DNA of 64,000 nucleotides from Perna viridis (lineage: Eukaryota), in assembly GCA_037379345.1 (NCBI GenBank), contig CM074511.1:69632862-69696861 (forward strand), read 5' to 3'. Of the stretch, positions 1,096 through 49,815 are shown piece by piece. Every line of letters starts with the position of its first letter. The stretch's first letter is position 1. The notes under the pieces are model-generated. The model made no database searches, had not been told where the DNA came from, and saw only the letters and a program-made list of their open reading frames with translations. The position numbers were made by a program, and so were the translations under genes.

Positions 1096-1278
1096 TTTTG
1101 ATGTTGAGAATGGAACAGGACCAGGGCGCCCTAACCTTGAAGGATCCAGTCCTTCCTCAAGTCGACTTATCCTACAAAACCTACCACAGAGACGGGAGTC
1201 CTTCCTCTACAGGTCTGACAGTGACTATGATCTGTCACCTAAGTCTGTTTCAAGACATTCTTCCATGCAAAGTGAAAT
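1096..1278 (+). CDS. PDE4: PDE4 (dunce-family cAMP phosphodiesterase) internal exon: N-terminal half of UCR1 with the PKA site
   Basis: Acceptor tttttctttgcag (AG 1094-1095), donor GTAAGT at 1279; 183 nt, phase 2-2. From 1097 it reads [60 protein letters not shown], containing the PDE4 hallmarks FDVENG and [18 protein letters not shown] (RRES at 1190-1201). This is a different frame from the listed ORF 1080..1286. Confidence 0.97.
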
Positions 1279-28835: not shown

Positions 28836-29708
28836 GCATTTGTCGTCTTCTTTTTGCATTGACTTACATTTATCAGTGTATGAGTTGTTAGATTATTATT
28901 TTCTTAGGTCATTTTTTTCTTTATCAATAAATTGAGGAAAATTTAACAATGAGAGATGGAAGCCTAAATGCTGCTAAGGCTAACATCATGTTTTAATCAA
29001 TAACACCTATTTACACCTGTAATTGTTAGGTAGAAAACAGGTATTTTTGTCTTACCTATGGAGGTAAAATGGCTTTGTTTATGTAAGCTATATACAAGTG
29101 TTGTATAAACATTTGTATAACAGTTTGATTCCATTATGGTTCTAAAACAGAAGGTGGTAAACCTTTGATATTGTAATGAGTTCAGCAATATAATAGTATG
29201 ACAAATATCTTTTTTTTCAAGTTTCTTTGTCATATAATATCTCCATAGTTTGTGTTAAGCTTCCAGCAATGTTTTGAAGAAATAATATTCTAATTATTCA
29301 TTTCAATGGTTTTCAAATTCTTTTTCAGGACAATTCTGGATGAGATTAATGTGAGGATATTGACAGATACTCTTGTCATGTGATTTACTAGTGTGTTCAC
29401 TTACTTTCTAATATGAATAATAATAATCCATTACATAGAGTATTGAGTACAAGTGTACTAAGAATTCCACGATCTAGGTATTCTTTTTGGCAAAGGTAAG
29501 AGTTTAAGTGATTAGTGTTAATTTTTTTCTTATTTGTACAAAGGTAGATAACTCTAAAATGAATTCTGCACTAATAAGTAATTTGTTATTGCACAATTGT
29601 AGACTTTTTTATAATCATGAGAAAATAAATAATTACATCTTAGATAGAAAATAAATATTAGAATATTAAATAAAAAAAATAAGAATTATGGTTTTGATTG
29701 TTATTGGT

Positions 29709-32050: not shown

Positions 32051-34859
32051 TTATGTGAGCATGCATTATTCTATAATTAAGGGATTCAGCAATGGTCCAT
32101 GTTTAAGCAATTTTGATTTTTAAAGGTTGGTTTTTAATTAATTCATAACTAGGTAGATATGAGATTTATTATTATTATGTAGATCTGTGATTTTTTGAAG
32201 TTCCCCTTTGAAAGACATTTTGATAATTCACACTGTTGGTAATTTCACTCTTGTGCACAGAACAAGTTCTATTTATATTCTTTGATCAAGGCTATTGGTT
32301 ATTTACTTTTTTACAATTGATTATCCTATTATTAATTTACTGTATTAATAAAATATTCATGATTCATGTTTGAAAACTTATTGTTTATATTCAGTAATTC
32401 TGAGAATCTTGTTTTTTGCACAATTCTTGGTCAAATTTAATGTCTGCACTCAGACTAACGGATTTATTCCTGCAATAATTACTCATAGGATACATATGAA
32501 ATTTTTGCTACAGATATCTTGATGATCCATGTTCTAATAGGTCTGTTTTTATGTATTTTATGTTTTCTGGGAGTGCATTGTATTTGTTGTAAATCATTGT
32601 GATTTTCCTTTCTAACAAAGAAATGCATTTTTTTCTTTGTAACTTTGATATTTTGCACATGCATGAAAAGTATTTATTTAAGAGTAATCAAGGGAACCAA
32701 GGTTATAGTGGTAATCAAAAGAATATAATCCAGGGACAAAGATCAGACAATGAAAACAGATATACACAACAAAGAACATAAAGTAACTAAAATCTTTGAA
32801 GTCTTCAACTTGGAGTTATCTTTCTTTGACTGGTATGTACCAACAGTGCATTAGAATTGTATCAAAGTACAATTTGTAGTATGGTGCACTTCTATTGTTC
32901 AATAATAATAAATTAGAAATCATGATAAGTAAACAATTATTTTCTTGAAACATCCTTTCTTACATAGAATTGTTTGTTTTGTCTTTTTTTTTTTGCTTAA
33001 TAAAAATGTTTGGAATGATAGAGGGGTACAGCTGGTTTTCATATTTGGTTGTTTATTTTCACCTTCAATGACACCCTAGATGTATCTTTTACATGTAGTT
33101 ACTAGTATATGGCTGATATATCTTCTGCTTTGAAAAAAAATATAGATTTGATAAAAAAAAGGAAACATTATGTAACATTTTTTTTTAACTTTTCCACAAC
33201 AAGATTTGTCTCCAATAGTGTTAAGGAAATAAAATTCTCCCGTTAAATATAAATTGAACTTGGTAAATTGATATGAAATTTATCAGCCCCTTGGAAGTAT
33301 ACTTTATAAATGATAAAAATGAGGTGTTGGCAGAATTGGTACACTGTATATAGTTAAAAAGGGATTTCAGAATATGTTTTGAAATAATTTGTTATCAAAT
33401 TTCTTTGCCATTTGCATTGTGAAGTCTACTTACATGTATAATAAGGGTCTAAAAGAAACCAATCAATGAATACATTTTCCCAATCTGATTTAAAACTGAT
33501 CTTGCATTACTCCCAGTTTTCTGTAACGTTGTGTGACGGTTGACAGGAAAGCAAGAACAATGTAAGATCAGCTTTTAATTAAATAGACATTTTCCAAGAA
33601 TTTGTTTTTATTGGAATTATAAGAATCAAACATTGTTTTTCTGTAATATGAATGCATAAAATAGGACCATTCAGTTGACCAATGACTCCTTTGGACTATA
33701 TTTTCTCTGGTTCTGGTAAACATTGTTCTGTTTCCTATTTTTATAAGAAAAAATTGAGACAGGCTGTCTCTTTTTCACAGGTACTCCTTTTTCAATGAGT
33801 TGTTCATGATTTATCACACTGGAAGATCCAGTTGAGGGTACTTAGGTGGGAAGTCTCCTCTTGGTGGAAAATTTTATTCAGAAATATAGTAAATAACCAA
33901 ATAACCTGGACCCCTGTCTTTCATTTCTGAGTCAGAACCCCCCCCCCCTTTCTTAAATTTAAAATTTCTAGATCTTCCCCACAATAACCATACTTCTTAC
34001 TCCATGCATGTTTGTGTGTACTTGTTTGACTACAGTTGCTTGGTTATTTTCAGCATTTTGAATTAGTGAACTAACATATTTACCTTTAGATAATGCTACT
34101 TATGCTGCTGAAATTGGTCTTTCAGAATACAAGGTATTATTTGAATTTGGAATTATATCAGATTTAAGAAAATGAGTCAAAAATGATTTGGAAGATTTAC
34201 CAGTATTCAGTTGGGGGTGAATCATGATGTCATGAGCAAAGGGTTAATTAGTTTTTTCTTGCTTTCTATAATCTTACTGACATAACCCCATAATCATGCC
34301 CCCAAATGTAACCCCCTGAGTAAGAGTTAATTTTTACATATTCTTTTTTTCTTTTTTTTACTTCCAGAATAATTCTAAACTTAGATTATACCTTGTTGAA
34401 GGTTTAAGTGTAAAAGAATTAGATTGTACAAAAAGATTAAATGTTCATTTCTTTTATTTTTATTGTTTTAACAACAGTGTTTAACCGAAATAGCAGATGT
34501 TATGTAAATATTGTCACATGATTCAACTAATGACTCCAGCATTAATGTTCTTTAATGTTACATTGGTATAGAATTCTACCTGTGTAATGTAGAATTAACA
34601 AGATACCCAAGCATGAATATAGACAAAGCCCTGCACTTTCTGAATTGTAACGGGCACATGTAACATACTGGCACGGTTTGTAACCTTTTAATAAGTTAAG
34701 CAAGAATTAGAATATATTTCCTCATTGAGTTTAAATGACCCACTGAGTTGACGTGTATTAAAAATCAATTGATTTAATATCATAATAAGGTTAATTGTTT
34801 AGTTTTTTCTTTCATTTGAAGTAAATATCTGTAGTATTATACAATTATAAATAATTAAT

Positions 34860-35598
34860 CTGTGAAGGGATCGATTATTAGGGTAGAAAAGGTAATCAAT
34901 GGCTATTAACTTAAGTTTCTTTTATTGACAAATTTTGGGCGGATTTAGAATAAATTATCGGTAATTATTAGTTTCAGTTGATAAATCTTACATTGTTAGT
35001 TTAATGGAGAACTAGTGTTGAGTAAATCTTGTTCACTCAGACTTTATAACCATACTGGAGTTCTTCAATCAATACATTGCGATATATTCCCCGACAGAAT
35101 TTGTATCGTGTTAGTCTAATAATCTTCTCATTTGCAATTCTTTTTCGTCAAATAATTGACCTAAGGAATACAAAAAAGTGGATTTTGTGTCTTGAATGTT
35201 TAATCACAGCGAATAGCTACAGCGGATTAATTTAAATAGACATAACTCATCTTTGTCAATAGACAGAATTCCAGTACACTTGTTAATATCGATAGAGAAC
35301 GACATCTGCCTCATATTTAAGGACATAAGAAATCGGTGATTTTATTTGTTGTCAGCCATCATCTAATACTGGATTTTTATTGACATTTGTTCATTCAACA
35401 TTATTTGAACTTTTTGTTGTGGAAGATGAGAATAAGCAGACATGTTTTTTATGATCATTTTTTTTCAACTTGGATGCAAAACTCAGCATATTGCTCATCA
35501 GAATCCTCCTTCAAAGTTGTTACAATAATTTGGACAGCGTTAATTGTTATATGTCTGCCGATTGTTTAAACCGTCAAAACCTTTGCTTCAGTCCAGTT
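34860..35598 (+). promoter_or_regulatory. CpG-retaining island; putative internal promoter/5' UTR of the short isoform
   Basis: About 20 CpGs counted in 34861-35790 versus about 2 in 28500-29500. A half-CRE TGACGTGT lies at 34749-34756 just upstream. Confidence 0.55.
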
Positions 35599-35828
35599 AT
35601 GCAGAAAATTGTGCAGTATTTGACTCCTCATTTTAAAAGTAATGGGTGTACAGTTGTGAAAAATAAACGTGATCGTGATAAAGTCAACTCAAGACGTTTT
35701 TCTACTTGTTTTAATTCCAGACATGCTGATGACCTCATTGTGACCCCATTTGCACAGATTCTTGCAAGTTTACGAAGTGTACGCAACAACTACATCACCT
35801 TAACCAATGTACAGGCACCAAGAGAAAG
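35599..35828 (+). CDS. PDE4: Probable alternative (5'-extended) first coding exon of a PDE4 short isoform with truncated UCR1
   Basis: The frame is open from 35470 through the acceptor into the UCR1b exon. ATG 35599 gives [51 protein letters not shown] (another in-frame ATG at 35551). It contains the PKA consensus RRFS and lies in the most CpG-rich segment I saw in the window. Confidence 0.7.
35721..35828 (+). CDS. PDE4: PDE4 exon: C-terminal half of UCR1
   Basis: Acceptor ttttctacttgttttaattccag, donor AG|GTAAGA at 35829; 108 nt, phase 2-2. Encodes (I)[35 protein letters not shown], the PDE4 [23 protein letters not shown] motif, and joins the 1096-1278 exon in frame (at+a). Confidence 0.97.
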
Positions 35829-36444
35829 GTAAGATATATGGTATTGTAGAACAAACATAACATATGTTTCAAAAACTTGATATATCTGCTGTCAAAGAAC
35901 ACATTATTGAAGTATCAATTCTATTGCTACTTTTAATTATGAAAACTACAAAACACCTAATAAGAATTTATACGGTTGTAAGTCTTAGCCAAGATTTCTG
36001 CTACCACCCAACCAATGCCCCACATTATTCAGTAGTAAGTTAGGATATTAACATTTTGTCACCAGATTTTGATTGCTCTGTTCATGGGATATTATACTCA
36101 ACCTGTTACATTTTATTTATTTCCTTTTAAATTAAACTGCATATGATTAACCTGGTCTAAAATCCTGTCATGTTCTCTCACCTTGACCTAGAATATGGAT
36201 TATAATATCTAACATCACTGGTTTAAACATGACTGTAGTTAAATCATTGCTTTTAATATGACTTGCATCCTTTACTCGATTATTAAGTGGACATTGAGTC
36301 GAATATTTTGAATAAATTTGTCATGGCTGTTATCAGCATTAGTAGTAATATCAATTATATTTTCAAGCTATACATCGTAAATAAATGTGTTGGTTTTTGT
36401 CAATATTTTTTTTTTTTCTGCAGTCAAGAAGTAAGTTCCTCTAA

Positions 36445-37096
36445 GTCAGGCCATATACAAGTCTGTAGGACCATTACATATACTGGTCTGTTCAATACTA
36501 AATTGGACTGTATACCAGTCTAAAGGACTGAAGTGTATACTGGCATGGTCAATACTAAATAGTACCATATACCAGTCTATAGGAATGTAGTGTATATTGG
36601 CCTGGTCAGTACTAAATAGGACCATATTTCAGTCTATAGGACTTATTTGTATCTGGGCTGGTCAATATTAGACCCTATATCATTCTGTAGGACTACAATG
36701 TATACTGGTACTGACCTGGTCAATATCAAACACTGTATCGGTCTGTAGGACTACCTTGTATACCAGTACTGGCCTGGTCAATATTAGATCCTATATCAGC
36801 CTGTAGGACTACAGTGTATAGCGGTACTGACATGGTCAGTATTAAACACTATATCAGTCTGTAGGACTACAGTGTATACAGGTACTGGCCTGGTCAGTAT
36901 TAGACCCTATATCAGTCTGTAGGGCTACCGTGTATAGTGGTACTGGCCTAGTCAATATTGAACACTATATCAGTCTGTAGGACTACCTTGTATACTGGTA
37001 CTGGCCTGGTCAATATTAGACCCTATATCAGTCTGTAGGGCTACTGTGTTTAGTGGTACTGGCCTGGTCAATATTTGACACATATCAGTCTGTAGG
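36445..37096. repeat. ~58-bp minisatellite
   Basis: Unit cagtctgtaggactacagtgtatactggtactggcctggtcaatattagaccctatat. Confidence 0.88.
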
Positions 37097-39465: not shown

Positions 39466-40029
39466 TATCTGTTCTTTTTCTACTATTAAATACCTTAATT
39501 AAACAGTATTCACCAAGTTTTCTCGTCTTTCTGAATTTCTATGTGTAAGTGGATGTTGCCAGGGTGTACCTGATTAATGGGTATTGTTCAAGTGCCTTGG
39601 TGTACATGAATGCTAATGCTATACCTTGTAAAATTCCTTTGAACTTACCTGAAGCAAAACAATTTGCAACAATTGTTATGTATATACTAACATAATAAAG
39701 ACAGAATTCAGATGTTTGTATATTGACAACAATCTTCCCAGACGCAATAGAAAAAGATGGCTTGTAATACAGTCAAGCTCCTGTGCTGTTGTTGAAGACA
39801 TTTTATTACCATGTAAGCCATATATCTAGGAGATCCAGATATGACAGCTGTTCCTTATCAATGTGTTTATGTCCTTACCCCATCTTAATGGAAGGGTAAA
39901 AAGATCTTTCTATTTCTGTCTAAGAATTACTTAGACTTGTTAATTATACCCAACTAAATGAGTTGGTGGTATTTTGGAATCACCTTGTCTGTCCGTCATT
40001 CTATCCATCCAATTATCTCAGCTTCTAGA

Positions 40030-40436
40030 TGGGTTTGTCACTTGACTGCTTTTCAAGGTAATTCATTTCAAAGGCCAGTCCATCTATGTCTTCCATGGGT
40101 TTGTCACTTGACTGCTTATCAAGGTAGATCATTTCAAAGACCAGTCCATTTATGTCCTCAATCGGTTTGTCACTCGACTGCTTATCAAGGTAGATCATTT
40201 CAGAGGCAAGTCCATCTATGTCCTCAATCGGTTTGTCACTCGACTGCTTATCAAGGTAGATCATTTCAAAGGCCAGTCAATCTATGTCCTCAGTGGGTTT
40301 GTCCTTTGACTGCTTATCAAGATAGATCATTTCAAAGGCCACTCCATCTATGTCCCCAGTCGGTTTGTCACTTGACTGCTTATCAAGGTAGTTCATTTCA
40401 AAGGCCAGTCCATCCATGGCCCAAATGGGTTTTTCA
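40030..40436. repeat. 66-bp minisatellite, about 6 copies
   Basis: Unit ggtttgtcacttgactgcttatcaaggtagatcatttcaaaggccagtccatctatgtcctcaatc; explains ORF 39958..40518. Confidence 0.9.
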
Positions 40437-41149
40437 CCCCTTACAATTTAATTTTGCCATCTCCAATATGTTTGTCTTACTGGCAGGATTATGGTCATTG
40501 GATTTATCTGATTGGTGAATACAGACAAGGTCATTTATATCCAGCTCTGATGTCACTGTGTTTTCTTACTTCAGTTTCTTCCATACATTTATTGTTGTCA
40601 TTTAGTTTTCAAAGTATGATGAAAAAGTCTGTTTAATTTTTATCTGAATTTGTAATTTAATTATTTTCTCATTATTGAATCTGTCCATACAAGACTTCTA
40701 GATCTGCAGGCAGTTAGAAGTGTGTTGACATTCATTACCCCTCTTTATTTCTACCTTAATTAGGTATATCATACTCACATTACACTTCTGTTTTGAACAA
40801 CTTTGATGCTTCAGTTTGAGGAAGCCTTCAGCATTGAATTCTAATATATTTTTAATTGAGATATCTGAAGATGGAAAACCTAAAGGGAGCTGCTTATGAC
40901 TAGTTTATTGTTTGTTTTTTTTAAAGAAGAATTAGTATGCAAGAAATCAAGAAATTCTGCCTGAAATATAAACTGTAATTAGTGAGTTATTGGAAGATAC
41001 ATGTATTTACCAAATTTGAGGAATGGTTCATACATAAAAAACAATTGGTAGTAAAATTTGAAGAGAATTATTTTAAGAGAACGAATCTCAAAGATATGAT
41101 AAGTGTCTTAGACAACAACAAAATCTGATTCATAATGTGCAATTAATGA

Positions 41150-45779: not shown

Positions 45780-45853
45780 ATCGAGAGGTGGCCCTTCTGG
45801 TTCACACAGTCATGGTAAATCTTCCTCAGGACAGGAAAACAATAAAGTGCCAG
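45780..45853 (+). CDS. PDE4: PDE4 exon: linker region 1 (LR1) between UCR1 and UCR2
   Basis: Acceptor tttttattttttag, donor CAG|GTAACT at 45854; 74 nt, phase 2 to phase 1, exactly the change needed to join the flanking exons. Encodes (R)SRGGPSGSHSHGKSSSGQENNKVP with no stop; low-complexity linker as expected for LR1. Confidence 0.85.
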
Positions 45854-49702: not shown

Positions 49703-49815
49703 ATGAAAAATATTCACAAATGGCCCTGGATACCTTAGAGGAATTAGATTGGTGTTTAGACCAATTAGAAACCATTCAGACACATCGGTCAGTCAGTGAC
49801 ATGGCATCAAGCAAG
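49703..49815 (+). CDS. PDE4: PDE4 exon: N-terminal half of UCR2
   Basis: Acceptor atttctttgcag, donor AAG|GTAACT at 49816; 113 nt, phase 1 to 0. Encodes (D)[37 protein letters not shown], the PDE4 [14 protein letters not shown] motif. Confidence 0.97.

What the first reader, a model, noticed from the sequence alone, without database searches (positions are those of the whole stretch)
35470..35828. Short PDE4 isoform that swaps the UCR1 PKA site for its own RRFS site encoded by the splice acceptor
Seen: the last ~250 nt of the 34-kb intron are stop-free in the frame of the UCR1b exon. ATG 35599 gives a 41-aa leader [41 protein letters not shown] with a hydrophobic start, two Cys, a basic patch and RRFS (35692-35703). 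The codons for FSTCFNSR are also the polypyrimidine tract and AG used by the long form, so the DNA would be dual-use. Established: long PDE4s are activated by PKA at RRES in UCR1 (here 1190-1201), which this isoform would skip. From memory, Aplysia PDE4 has a membrane-targeted short form with a unique N-terminus plus truncated UCR1; I cannot confirm homology here. Inference: a membrane-targeted isoform that keeps PKA feedback through a separately encoded site.
Basis: partly seen in the sequence, partly recalled or inferred. Interest (0 to 1): 0.85.

Follow-up and report, generated by a model that had tools for sequence, protein, structure and literature searches.

The report
Conserved short-form PDE4 first exon
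The open frame running into this PDE4 exon is a real, strongly conserved alternative first coding exon, the counterpart of the membrane-targeted "short form" of PDE4 already cloned in the sea slug Aplysia. The idea that its RRFS motif restores PKA control is untested and only patchily conserved.

Summary
The frame of the UCR1b exon (35721-35829) is open for 266 nt upstream. ATG 35599 gives a 41-residue leader with RRFS at 35692-35703, and its last codons are the polypyrimidine tract and AG of the acceptor.

This is not chance.
- Nine genomic loci from other species keep one open frame from ATG (MQK...) through the acceptor AG and UCR1b to the GT donor, with leaders of 29-76 residues. DNA similarity to the window starts at the ATG and stops at the donor.
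- A close relative has an upstream intron 75-83% identical with 51 gap columns. Its leader has only 5 changes in 122 nt, all synonymous, and no indels.
- Published Aplysia short-form cloning primers encode MQKLNF... and ...RKSSTD at codon 30. An Aplysia-like locus matches both with exact spacing, so the leader is the orthologue of the known ApPDE4 short-form N-terminus.

Expression in this species is unresolved. Unspliced contigs cover the leader at 3-8x against 55-69x for the exon, which is similar to patches of intron background.

A basic-x-Ser/Thr motif sits at this position in the window's own sequence group and in most gastropod sequences. It is absent from the other bivalve-like (MQK.VQYL-type) groups, and weak in the Aplysia-like and Sepia sequences.

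Verdict: a new member of a known kind. The PKA feedback claim remains a hypothesis.

The parts
35399..35598 (+). Putative promoter-proximal region and 5' UTR of the short-form transcript. The transcription start is not mapped.
   Evidence: Unspliced contigs start at 35399 (X1), 35426 (X7) and 35529 (X11) and run across the acceptor. This stretch is not conserved: 74.7% identity with 34 gap columns against the close relative L011. It is unalignable to more distant species. It holds several upstream ATGs, including the in-frame ATG at 35551. The 16 residues from ATG 35551 to the MQK start carry 3 amino-acid changes in L011.
35599..35646 (+). Start codon and conserved hydrophobic N-terminal block ([16 protein letters not shown]). 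It corresponds to the hydrophobic domain of the Aplysia short form.
   Evidence: Alignments A1 and A3 show Q2, L8 and P10 invariant and M1, K3, F12, N15 and G in at least 90% of sequences. Synonymous sites are near saturation (pS 0.5-1.0) while pN is 0.04-0.31. The Aplysia primer encodes MQKLNF (PMC6567041 Table 1).
35647..35697 (+). Variable linker with Cys17 and the basic patch (K21-R33: 7 basic and 2 acidic residues out of 13).
   Evidence: Counts are. The linker length varies between species by in-frame indels only. The NGC[NSTG]VVK motif with the Cys is kept in most bivalve-like sequences. PMC4580752 states that a basic domain is needed for membrane targeting in Aplysia.
35692..35703 (+). 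RRFS, a candidate basophilic-kinase (PKA-type) site. Ser35 lies 7 residues before the first UCR1b residue.
   Evidence: The sequence is. In the close relative, R32 (AGA to CGA) and S35 (TCT to TCC) changed only synonymously. Conservation across species is mixed.
35698..35720 (+). Dual-use stretch. It provides codons F34-R41 of the leader, and it is the polypyrimidine tract plus AG acceptor used by transcripts that come from upstream exons.
   Evidence: Spliced contigs begin at 35719/35721. A pyrimidine-rich run ending in C-AG precedes UCR1b in all 10 loci compared, and it is ..ttcc AG in seven of them.
35721..35829 (+). UCR1b exon ([12 protein letters not shown]...). It is shared by all isoforms and ends with 2 nt of a split codon.
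   Evidence: It matches Pfam PF18100 PDE4_UCR at 1.4e-9. RNA depth is 40-55 in contig runs and about 5 in the raw RNA run X21. The donor is AG|gtaaga.
1096..1278 (+). UCR1a exon with the canonical PKA site RRESF (RRES at 1190-1201). The short form skips it.
   Evidence: The sequence is. It matches the Mytilus long-form protein P0251.
29413..29495 (+). A second alternative 5' coding exon (MNNNNPLHRVLSTSVLRIPRSRYSFWQ-) that splices to 35721.
   Evidence: The loose end of the 3963-nt contig in X11 maps to 29470-29493. The open frame and ATG 29413 are. The sequence is nearly identical to the N-termini of Mytilus RefSeq isoforms X17 and X13 (P0313, P0320).
45780..45853 (+). LR1 linker exon joined to the donor at 35829.
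   Evidence: The loose end behind 35828 in X1 and X11 maps to 45780-45809. The exon end is inferred from frame continuity and from the match to Mytilus proteins.
49703..49815 (+). UCR2 exon ([22 protein letters not shown]...).
   Evidence: The sequence is. It matches PF18100 at 2.1e-14.

Best explanation
The PDE4 gene in this window belongs to a mussel-like mollusc. Window 35599-35829 is a hybrid exon.

When transcription starts far upstream, only 35721-35829 is used, as the internal UCR1b exon, and the preceding 23 nt act as polypyrimidine tract and AG. When transcription starts from an internal promoter just upstream (inferred, somewhere in about 35.40-35.59 kb), the same DNA is read through without splicing. 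Translation then starts at ATG 35599, and a 41-residue leader is fused in frame to UCR1b, LR1 (45780), UCR2 (49703) and the catalytic exons 6-7.5 kb beyond the window.

The product lacks UCR1a and its RRES PKA site but keeps the UCR2-binding half of UCR1. [quoted passage not shown] In Aplysia, the hydrophobic N-terminal block, a basic domain and UCR1-UCR2-mediated oligomerisation together put the enzyme on the plasma membrane. The same role is inferred here by homology.

What is shown: the coding status, the orthology, the exon structure and the use of the acceptor. What is inferred: the internal promoter, membrane targeting in this species, and any phosphorylation of RRFS. The confidence given is for the coding-exon and orthology statement.
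For: 1. Deep conservation as coding sequence.
- Nine genomic loci from other species (L002-L010) each have ATG-MQK..., an open frame across the acceptor AG, UCR1b and a GT donor. Leaders are 29-76 residues long and differ by in-frame indels only.
- blastn similarity to the window begins at 35595-35602 and ends at 35833. Apart from one weak, opposite-strand match, nothing is alignable in the remaining kilobases of flank.
- In the N-terminal block, pS is 0.5-1.0 against pN 0.04-0.31. This is like the constitutive exon.

2. Close-range test against a related species (L011/L012).
- The upstream intron is 83.4% and 74.7% identical, with 51 gap columns.
- The leader has 5 changes in 122 nt, all synonymous, and no indels.
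- P(5 of 5 changes synonymous) = 3e-4. Fisher's test of leader against the adjacent intron gives 4e-8.

3. Link to the cloned Aplysia isoform.
- The primers for the short-form N30 construct (PMC6567041 Table 1) encode MQKLNF and RKSSTD.
- L007 matches them at 16/18 and 17/18 nt, exactly 30 codons apart. Its leader runs straight into ...PR|[12 protein letters not shown].
- PMC4580752 and PMC6827574 describe the hydrophobic N-terminus, the basic domain and the UCR1-UCR2 module of the short form.

4. A full-length MQK-type PDE4 with a catalytic domain exists in Pomacea (P0158, 665 aa).

5. Gene context.
- PF18100 matches the UCR1b and UCR2 exons.
- PDEase_I exons lie downstream on the same strand at C1:69702668-69704382.

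6. RNA evidence.
- In three runs that contain spliced PDE4 cDNA, unspliced contigs bridge the leader and the exon (35399-35750, 35426-35727) or lie within the leader (35529-35704).
- All 14 likely-RNA holders, from 6 studies, hold at least 41% of the words of 35400-35829. The exon alone would give about 20%.
Against: No transcription start site and no mature mRNA that carries both the leader and the 35829-to-45780 junction was seen in this species.
- Leader depth (3.3-8.1, up to 10.7 per bin) is 6-19% of exon depth. It is no higher than some other intronic patches, for example 34086-34383 at 5-9.
- The one certain RNA run (X21, raw reads, about 19% sampled) shows about 5x on the exon and about 0.2x on the leader.
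- Contigs cannot show starts or strand.
- If the start lies at or before 35426, several upstream AUGs precede ATG 35599.
- No MQK-type isoform was among the members listed (up to 15 per cluster) for the RefSeq bivalve clusters. Only the other truncated-UCR1 type was listed.
- The identities of most comparison species are unknown, because they are Logan or ENA contigs.
Confidence: 0.88

Rival explanations
1. Ser35 in RRFS is phosphorylated by PKA and restores cAMP-PKA feedback activation to an isoform that has lost the UCR1 RRES site.
For: - RRFS fits the R-R-x-S consensus.
- [RK][RK]x[ST] lies 7-10 residues before UCR1b in the window's group (RRFS in 5 distinct sequences), in Lottia (KRRQS-V), in two further gastropod-like sequences (KRRNS), in Pomacea-type sequences (KRRS/KRRT) and in several sea-slug sequences (KRKT/KRKS).
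- Shuffling each leader gives the motif in the last 14 residues only 13-39% of the time.
- In the close relative, the R32 and S35 codons changed but the residues did not.
- The site sits next to the UCR1 segment that binds UCR2. This last point is from general PDE4 knowledge, not from a tool result.
Against: - The motif is absent from the two large bivalve-like groups (ENCSFS, DDSFS, DKSxQSFS), from RRRNY[VI]QFSS, from P0021 and from P0401.
- It is only weak in the Aplysia-like sequence (KSKT) and in Sepia (KSKNS).
- The invariant part (F-S) is encoded by TTT TCY, which is the polypyrimidine tract, so splicing constraint can explain its conservation.
- Related sequences share the motif by descent, so the counts are not independent.
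- No phosphorylation data were found. The residue at +1 here is Thr, not a hydrophobic residue.
Confidence: 0.2
2. The exon is coding, but the Arg pair and Ser35 are simply part of the basic, membrane-binding patch and of the splice signal. Under this view there is no dedicated kinase regulation, or at most an electrostatic switch that releases the enzyme from the membrane rather than activating catalysis.
For: - The Aplysia short form binds the plasma membrane through non-specific electrostatic interactions that need a basic domain, and depleting phosphoinositides releases it (PMC4580752, PMC6827574, PMC6567041).
- The leader has 7 basic residues in positions 21-33.
- The linker varies greatly in length and sequence but stays basic and Ser-rich in all species.
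Against: - This does not explain why K/R-R-x-S/T recurs at a nearly fixed distance from UCR1b in several gastropod lineages and in this one.
- There are no data on localisation in this species.
Confidence: 0.45
3. The open frame is a chance feature, or a conserved non-coding element (branch point or intronic splicing enhancer) of the 34-kb intron, and is never translated.
For: - The RNA coverage seen could all be pre-mRNA.
- Conservation next to an acceptor is expected for splice signals.
Against: - Conservation reaches 122 nt upstream and stops exactly at the ATG.
- All 5 changes in the close relative are synonymous, and there are no indels beside an indel-rich intron.
- Indels between distant species are all in frame, in 9 loci.
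- The orthologous Aplysia cDNA was cloned and expressed.
Confidence: 0.03

Closest known systems
Aplysia kurodai PDE4 short form (ApPDE4-S; Jang et al. 2010 Learn Mem 17:469; Kim et al. 2014 J Biol Chem 289:25797, as cited in PMC4580752)
   Same: - The N-terminus starts MQK followed by a hydrophobic block (...[FY]L[ST]P.F..NG).
- It has a basic, Ser-rich linker and runs directly into the second half of UCR1 and then UCR2.
- It has the same genomic layout in an Aplysia-like locus, where the leader is contiguous with the UCR1b exon across the acceptor AG.
   Different: - The leader is 41 residues here against 54 in the Aplysia-like locus, and only 8 of 15 aligned residues in the N-terminal block are identical.
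- This species has a canonical RRFS where the Aplysia-like sequence has KSKT.
- Cys17 is conserved among bivalve-like sequences, although several sea-slug sequences also have a Cys at about position 18.
- Expression and localisation have not been tested here.
Second truncated-UCR1 isoform type (N-terminus ...HRVLSTSVLRIPRSRYSFWQR-), annotated for example as Mytilus edulis isoform X17, M. galloprovincialis X13, and scallop, clam, abalone and octopus isoforms. Related N-termini occur in crustacean and insect PDE4 (dunce).
   Same: It uses the same acceptor at 35721, also skips UCR1a and its RRES, and also carries a basic-x-Ser-Phe motif just upstream of UCR1b.
   Different: It is encoded by a separate exon 6.2 kb upstream (29413-29495) that is spliced on, rather than by read-through of the acceptor. 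It was the 5' partner in the abundant X11 contig. It shows no sequence similarity to the MQK leader.
Mammalian short and super-short PDE4 isoforms (for example PDE4B2, PDE4D1/D2, PDE4A1). This comparison is from general knowledge.
   Same: They arise from internal promoters within the gene, have unique N-termini that set localisation, and have lost the UCR1 PKA site.
   Different: Mammalian short forms lack all of UCR1 and begin before or within UCR2. Here the UCR2-binding half of UCR1 is kept, and the unique N-terminus is a 5' extension of that exon.
PKA site of long-form PDE4 (RRESF at the start of UCR1; Ser54 in PDE4D3). This comparison is from general knowledge.
   Same: R-R-x-S lies N-terminal of the UCR1 helix that contacts UCR2.
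   Different: The Ser is 30 residues before UCR1b in the long form (exon 1096-1278) and 7 residues before it in the leader. There is no sequence homology and no biochemical evidence for the leader site.

Membership tests
PDE4 (cAMP-specific phosphodiesterase 4 / dunce) gene | UCR1 and UCR2 upstream conserved regions | tested here: met
   PF18100 PDE4_UCR matches window:35599-35829 (1.4e-9) and the UCR2 exon 49705-49815 (2.1e-14). The UCR1a exon carries [18 protein letters not shown].
PDE4 (cAMP-specific phosphodiesterase 4 / dunce) gene | PDEase_I catalytic domain downstream in the same gene | tested here: met
   PF00233 exon matches lie at G000:C1:69702668-69704382 on the + strand, 5.8-7.5 kb past the window end.
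Molluscan PDE4 short form (ApPDE4-S type) | Unique N-terminus starting MQK plus a hydrophobic block, homologous to the cloned Aplysia short form | tested here: met
   Alignments A1 and A3. The Aplysia primers encode MQKLNF and RKSSTD(30), and L007 matches both with exact spacing.
Molluscan PDE4 short form (ApPDE4-S type) | Truncated UCR1 (second half only) followed by UCR2 | tested here: met
   The leader is in frame with UCR1b. The donor at 35829 joins LR1 at 45780, followed by UCR2 at 49703.
Molluscan PDE4 short form (ApPDE4-S type) | Basic domain after the hydrophobic block | tested here: met
   K21-R33 holds 7 basic and 2 acidic residues out of 13.
Molluscan PDE4 short form (ApPDE4-S type) | A mature mRNA that starts in the intron and carries the leader, in this species | tested here: inconclusive
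   Unspliced contigs cover the leader at 6-19% of exon depth, but similar depth occurs elsewhere in the intron, and the raw RNA run is too shallow.
Molluscan PDE4 short form (ApPDE4-S type) | Plasma-membrane localisation through the N-terminus | not testable with these tools
   This is known only for Aplysia constructs (PMC4580752, PMC6567041).
PKA substrate site | R-R-x-S/T consensus present | tested here: met
   RRFS at 35692-35703.
PKA substrate site | Motif conserved in orthologues beyond what composition and descent would give | tested here: inconclusive
   The motif is present in the window's group, in Lottia, and in the KRRNS, KRRS/T and KRK[ST] gastropod-like sequences. It is absent from the other bivalve-like groups, Sepia, P0021 and P0401, and weak in the Aplysia-like sequence. 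The overlap with the polypyrimidine tract confounds the test.
PKA substrate site | Phosphorylation by PKA and an effect on activity | not testable with these tools
   No data were found in the papers that could be read.

The most novel reading that the evidence does not exclude
In molluscan PDE4, every alternative 5' module that feeds into the UCR1b exon brings its own basophilic Ser/Thr just upstream of the UCR2-binding helix. The three modules are UCR1a with RRESF, the LSTSV-type exon with [KR]-x-R-x-S-F-W, and the MQK-type leader with RRFS or KRRxS. Under this reading the 'truncated-UCR1' isoforms stay under PKA-type control. In the MQK type the regulatory Ser is written in the same nucleotides that serve as the 3' splice site for the other isoforms.
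Probability: 0.2. Interest if true: 0.6.

Novelty: new member of a known kind. Interest (0 to 1): 0.35.

Why it matters
The result assigns a function to 122 nt that would otherwise be read as intron. It shows that the Aplysia short form is an old isoform, under purifying selection and shared by bivalves and gastropods and probably cephalopods, rather than a peculiarity of one sea slug. Gene-model pipelines seem to miss it often, because only one full-length model carrying it (Pomacea) turned up.

It is also a clean example of a hybrid first/internal exon in which a 3' splice site is also coding sequence.

For cAMP signalling, the result gives a concrete and cheap experiment on a candidate kinase site: an S35A change in a PKA assay. 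That site would matter for how compartmentalised PDE4 is regulated in molluscan neurons. The present evidence for it is weak.

Tried and rejected
- **Chance open frame:** rejected.
- **Non-coding splicing element:** rejected, because only synonymous changes and in-frame indels are seen.
- **Earlier findings of this scan:** nothing near the window and nothing for PDE4 words.
- **Primary Aplysia papers:** Learn Mem 2010, J Biol Chem 2014 and Mol Cells 2011 are not held. The link to Aplysia therefore rests on a primer table and on summaries in later papers.
- **Profile search headed by a full-length PDE4 (A2):** it ranked hits by whole-length similarity. It gave many long forms and only one full-length MQK-type protein.
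- **Search with the Pomacea N-terminal 50 residues:** it found only itself, most likely because isoforms are merged into 90% clusters that are represented by long forms. This says nothing about absence.
- **RefSeq cluster members:** at most 15 are listed per cluster, and no MQK-type isoform was among them. This is no proof that none is annotated.
- **Read laying:** it could not place a transcription start. Contigs give no ends or strand, and the raw RNA run was shallow.
- **Rfam on the very abundant element at 32680-32794:** no match. The element is an interspersed repeat.
- **Cys37 as a lipidation site:** not pursued, because its codon lies in the polypyrimidine tract.
- **Not attempted:** no structure or complex prediction was run. 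Exons were searched separately by reference.

Full report
**1.

The + strand of the window carries the 5' part of a PDE4 gene.
- UCR1a exon 1096-1278, with RRES at 1190-1201.
- UCR1b exon 35721-35829, acceptor ...aattccAG|A, donor AG|gtaaga.
- LR1 linker exon from 45780.
- UCR2 exon 49703-49815.

Pfam PF18100 matches the UCR1b and UCR2 exons. PDEase_I catalytic exons follow on the same strand 5.8-7.5 kb beyond the window.

The UCR1b frame is open from 35455. Residues F34 to R41 are encoded by the polypyrimidine tract and the AG. With a stop frequency of 0.069 per codon, 88 open codons upstream of an acceptor has probability about 0.002 by composition and 0.005 empirically in this window.

**2. 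The leader is coding sequence under purifying selection**

A HMMER search of the 77-residue leader plus exon against 1.84 billion representatives returned short open frames from other organisms that match over the whole query, not just the exon. I fetched nine of their contigs (L002-L010).
- All nine are genomic, because a GT donor follows the exon.
- All nine keep a start (ATG-MQK...; V in L003, see section 8), an uninterrupted frame across a pyrimidine-rich tract and AG, and then UCR1b.
- Leader length ranges from 29 to 76 residues, so every indel between them is in frame.
- DNA similarity to the window starts at 35595-35602, which is the ATG, and stops at 35833. Apart from one weak, opposite-strand match, no other part of the 4-kb region compared is alignable.
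- In the N-terminal block [16 protein letters not shown], synonymous sites are near saturation (pS 0.5-1.0) while pN is 0.04-0.31, as in the constitutive exon.

A close relative gives the cleanest test (L011/L012).
- The upstream intron is 83.4% and 74.7% identical, with 51 gap columns.
- The 122-nt leader has five substitutions and no indels. All five are synonymous, and two of them fall in the R32 and S35 codons.
- P(5 of 5 changes synonymous) = 3e-4. Fisher's test of leader against the adjacent intron gives 4e-8.
- The in-frame stretch upstream of the MQK start shows amino-acid changes and is not conserved. ATG 35599 is therefore the conserved start, not ATG 35551.

**3. It is the orthologue of the Aplysia short form**

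Later papers from the same group summarise the Aplysia PDE4 short form. It has a moderately hydrophobic N-terminus (N20/N30), a basic domain and a UCR1-UCR2 module. It reaches the plasma membrane through non-specific electrostatic interactions that oligomerisation reinforces (PMC4580752, PMC6827574, PMC6567041, PMC6851389).

The primer table of PMC6567041 gives the ends of the N30 construct. The sense primer encodes MQKLNF and the antisense primer encodes RKSSTD. Locus L007 matches them at 16/18 and 17/18 nt, exactly 30 codons apart. In L007 this N-terminus runs on into ...PR|[12 protein letters not shown] across an AG acceptor.

MQK-type leaders also occur in these sequences:
- Plakobranchus (P0013).
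- A full-length 665-residue Pomacea protein with a catalytic domain (P0158).
- Sepia, in a degraded form (MQYLSP, P0015).

The Lottia model (P0012) starts differently but shares the C-terminal part (KRRQSVIFTSR-H).

**4. Expression in this species is not settled**

Three contig runs contain spliced PDE4 cDNA. Contigs of 3963 and 4308 nt touch only 35719/35721-35828, and their loose ends map to 29470-29493 and 45780-45809.

In the same runs, low-depth contigs run unspliced across the acceptor (35399-35750 at 8.1x and 35426-35727 at 3.4x) or lie within the leader (35529-35704 at 3.3x). The exon contigs are at 55-69x. The first 450 nt of the downstream intron has no coverage. All 14 likely-RNA holders, from six studies, hold at least 41% of the words of 35400-35829.

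However, other intron patches have similar depth, for example 34086-34383. The only certain RNA run (X21, stranded raw reads) has about 5x on the exon and about 0.2x on the leader. Contigs cannot show starts. The coverage is therefore compatible with a minor internal-promoter transcript and equally with pre-mRNA.

Purifying selection against the close relative implies the exon is used somewhere. In Aplysia the isoform is mainly neuronal.

**5. The dual-use DNA is real but ordinary in kind**

The window shows the standard anatomy of a hybrid first/internal exon. Nucleotides 35698-35720 are both codons and the 3' splice signal. This overlap can explain why F-S-x-[CY]-F-[NH]-[SC]-R is so constant among bivalve-like sequences.

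**6. The PKA-site idea remains a hypothesis**

[RK][RK]x[ST] lies 7-10 residues before UCR1b in these sequences:
- The window's own group (RRFS in five distinct sequences).
- Lottia (KRRQS).
- KRRNS sequences.
- Pomacea-type KRRS/KRRT.
- Several sea-slug sequences (KRKT/KRKS).

Shuffling each leader yields the motif only 13-39% of the time.

Against this, the motif is missing in the two larger bivalve-like groups (ENCSFS, DDSFS, DKSxQSFS), in RRRNY[VI]QFSS, in P0021 and in P0401. It is weak in the Aplysia-like sequence (KSKT) and in Sepia. The sequences are related, so these counts are not independent events.

I put about 0.2 on a real PKA feedback site. A larger share goes to the residues being part of the basic membrane-binding patch, perhaps acting as an electrostatic switch.

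**7. A second truncated-UCR1 isoform**

The abundant X11 contig joins UCR1b to an exon at 29413-29495 (MNNNNPLHRVLSTSVLRIPRSRYSFWQ-). This sequence is almost identical to the N-termini of Mytilus RefSeq isoforms X17 and X13, which marks the window's organism as mussel-like. It is homologous to N-termini in scallops, clams, abalone, octopus, Pomacea, crustaceans and insects.

This exon also carries a conserved basic-x-Ser-Phe-Trp motif. That motif prompts the more novel reading given separately.

**8. Limits**

- L003 has Val in place of the initiator Met, together with a 133-codon upstream extension.

**Verdict**

The isoform class is already known from Aplysia, so this is a new member of a known kind. 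The regulatory claim is untested.

Noticed in passing
window 29413-29495 (+): An alternative 5' coding exon (MNNNNPLHRVLSTSVLRIPRSRYSFWQ-) is spliced to the UCR1b acceptor, and it was the 5' partner in the abundant X11 contig. It is nearly identical to the N-termini of Mytilus isoforms X17 and X13. It carries a widely conserved [KR]-x-R-x-S-F-W motif that is also found in scallop, clam, abalone, octopus, crustacean and insect PDE4 N-termini.
   Followed up: partly
window 32680-32794: A 115-nt element has enormous summed depth in RNA-derived contigs (about 50,000-100,000), with hundreds of contigs and tandem 'goes back' joints. It has no Rfam match. It looks like an interspersed or satellite-like repeat that is present in many transcripts.
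   Followed up: partly
window 34086-34532 (+): This intronic patch is covered in all three contig runs (5-9x) and by a few reads of the stranded RNA run, in the same orientation as the gene's exon reads. It could be pre-mRNA, another 5' exon or part of a long 5' UTR. It remains unexplained.
   Followed up: no
window 36479-37096: A tandem repeat array of about 620 nt (period 57/58, also 116) lies in the intron just downstream of the UCR1b exon.
   Followed up: no
L003:2430-3071: In one related species the initiator Met of the MQK block is Val (GTT), and the frame stays open for a further 133 Ser/Asn-rich codons upstream to another Met. This suggests a lineage-specific N-terminal extension of the short form.
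   Followed up: no
G000:C11:28716170-28716859 (-): A complete PDEase_I domain (E 1.4e-70) sits in a single uninterrupted 438-residue open frame, unlike the multi-exon PDE genes elsewhere in this genome. It may be a retrogene or a single-exon PDE.
   Followed up: no
window 35647-35658 (Cys17): The motif NGC[NSTG]VVK, including the Cys directly after the hydrophobic block, is kept in most bivalve-like MQK leaders. Several sea-slug sequences also have a Cys near position 18, in a different context. It is a candidate S-acylation site and has not been tested.
   Followed up: partly
window 39958-40515 (+): This is the longest open stretch on the + strand (186 codons). It is built of repeated units of about 20 residues (...VCHLTAYQGRSFQRPVHLC...) and lies inside the intron between UCR1b and LR1. 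It was not examined.
   Followed up: no
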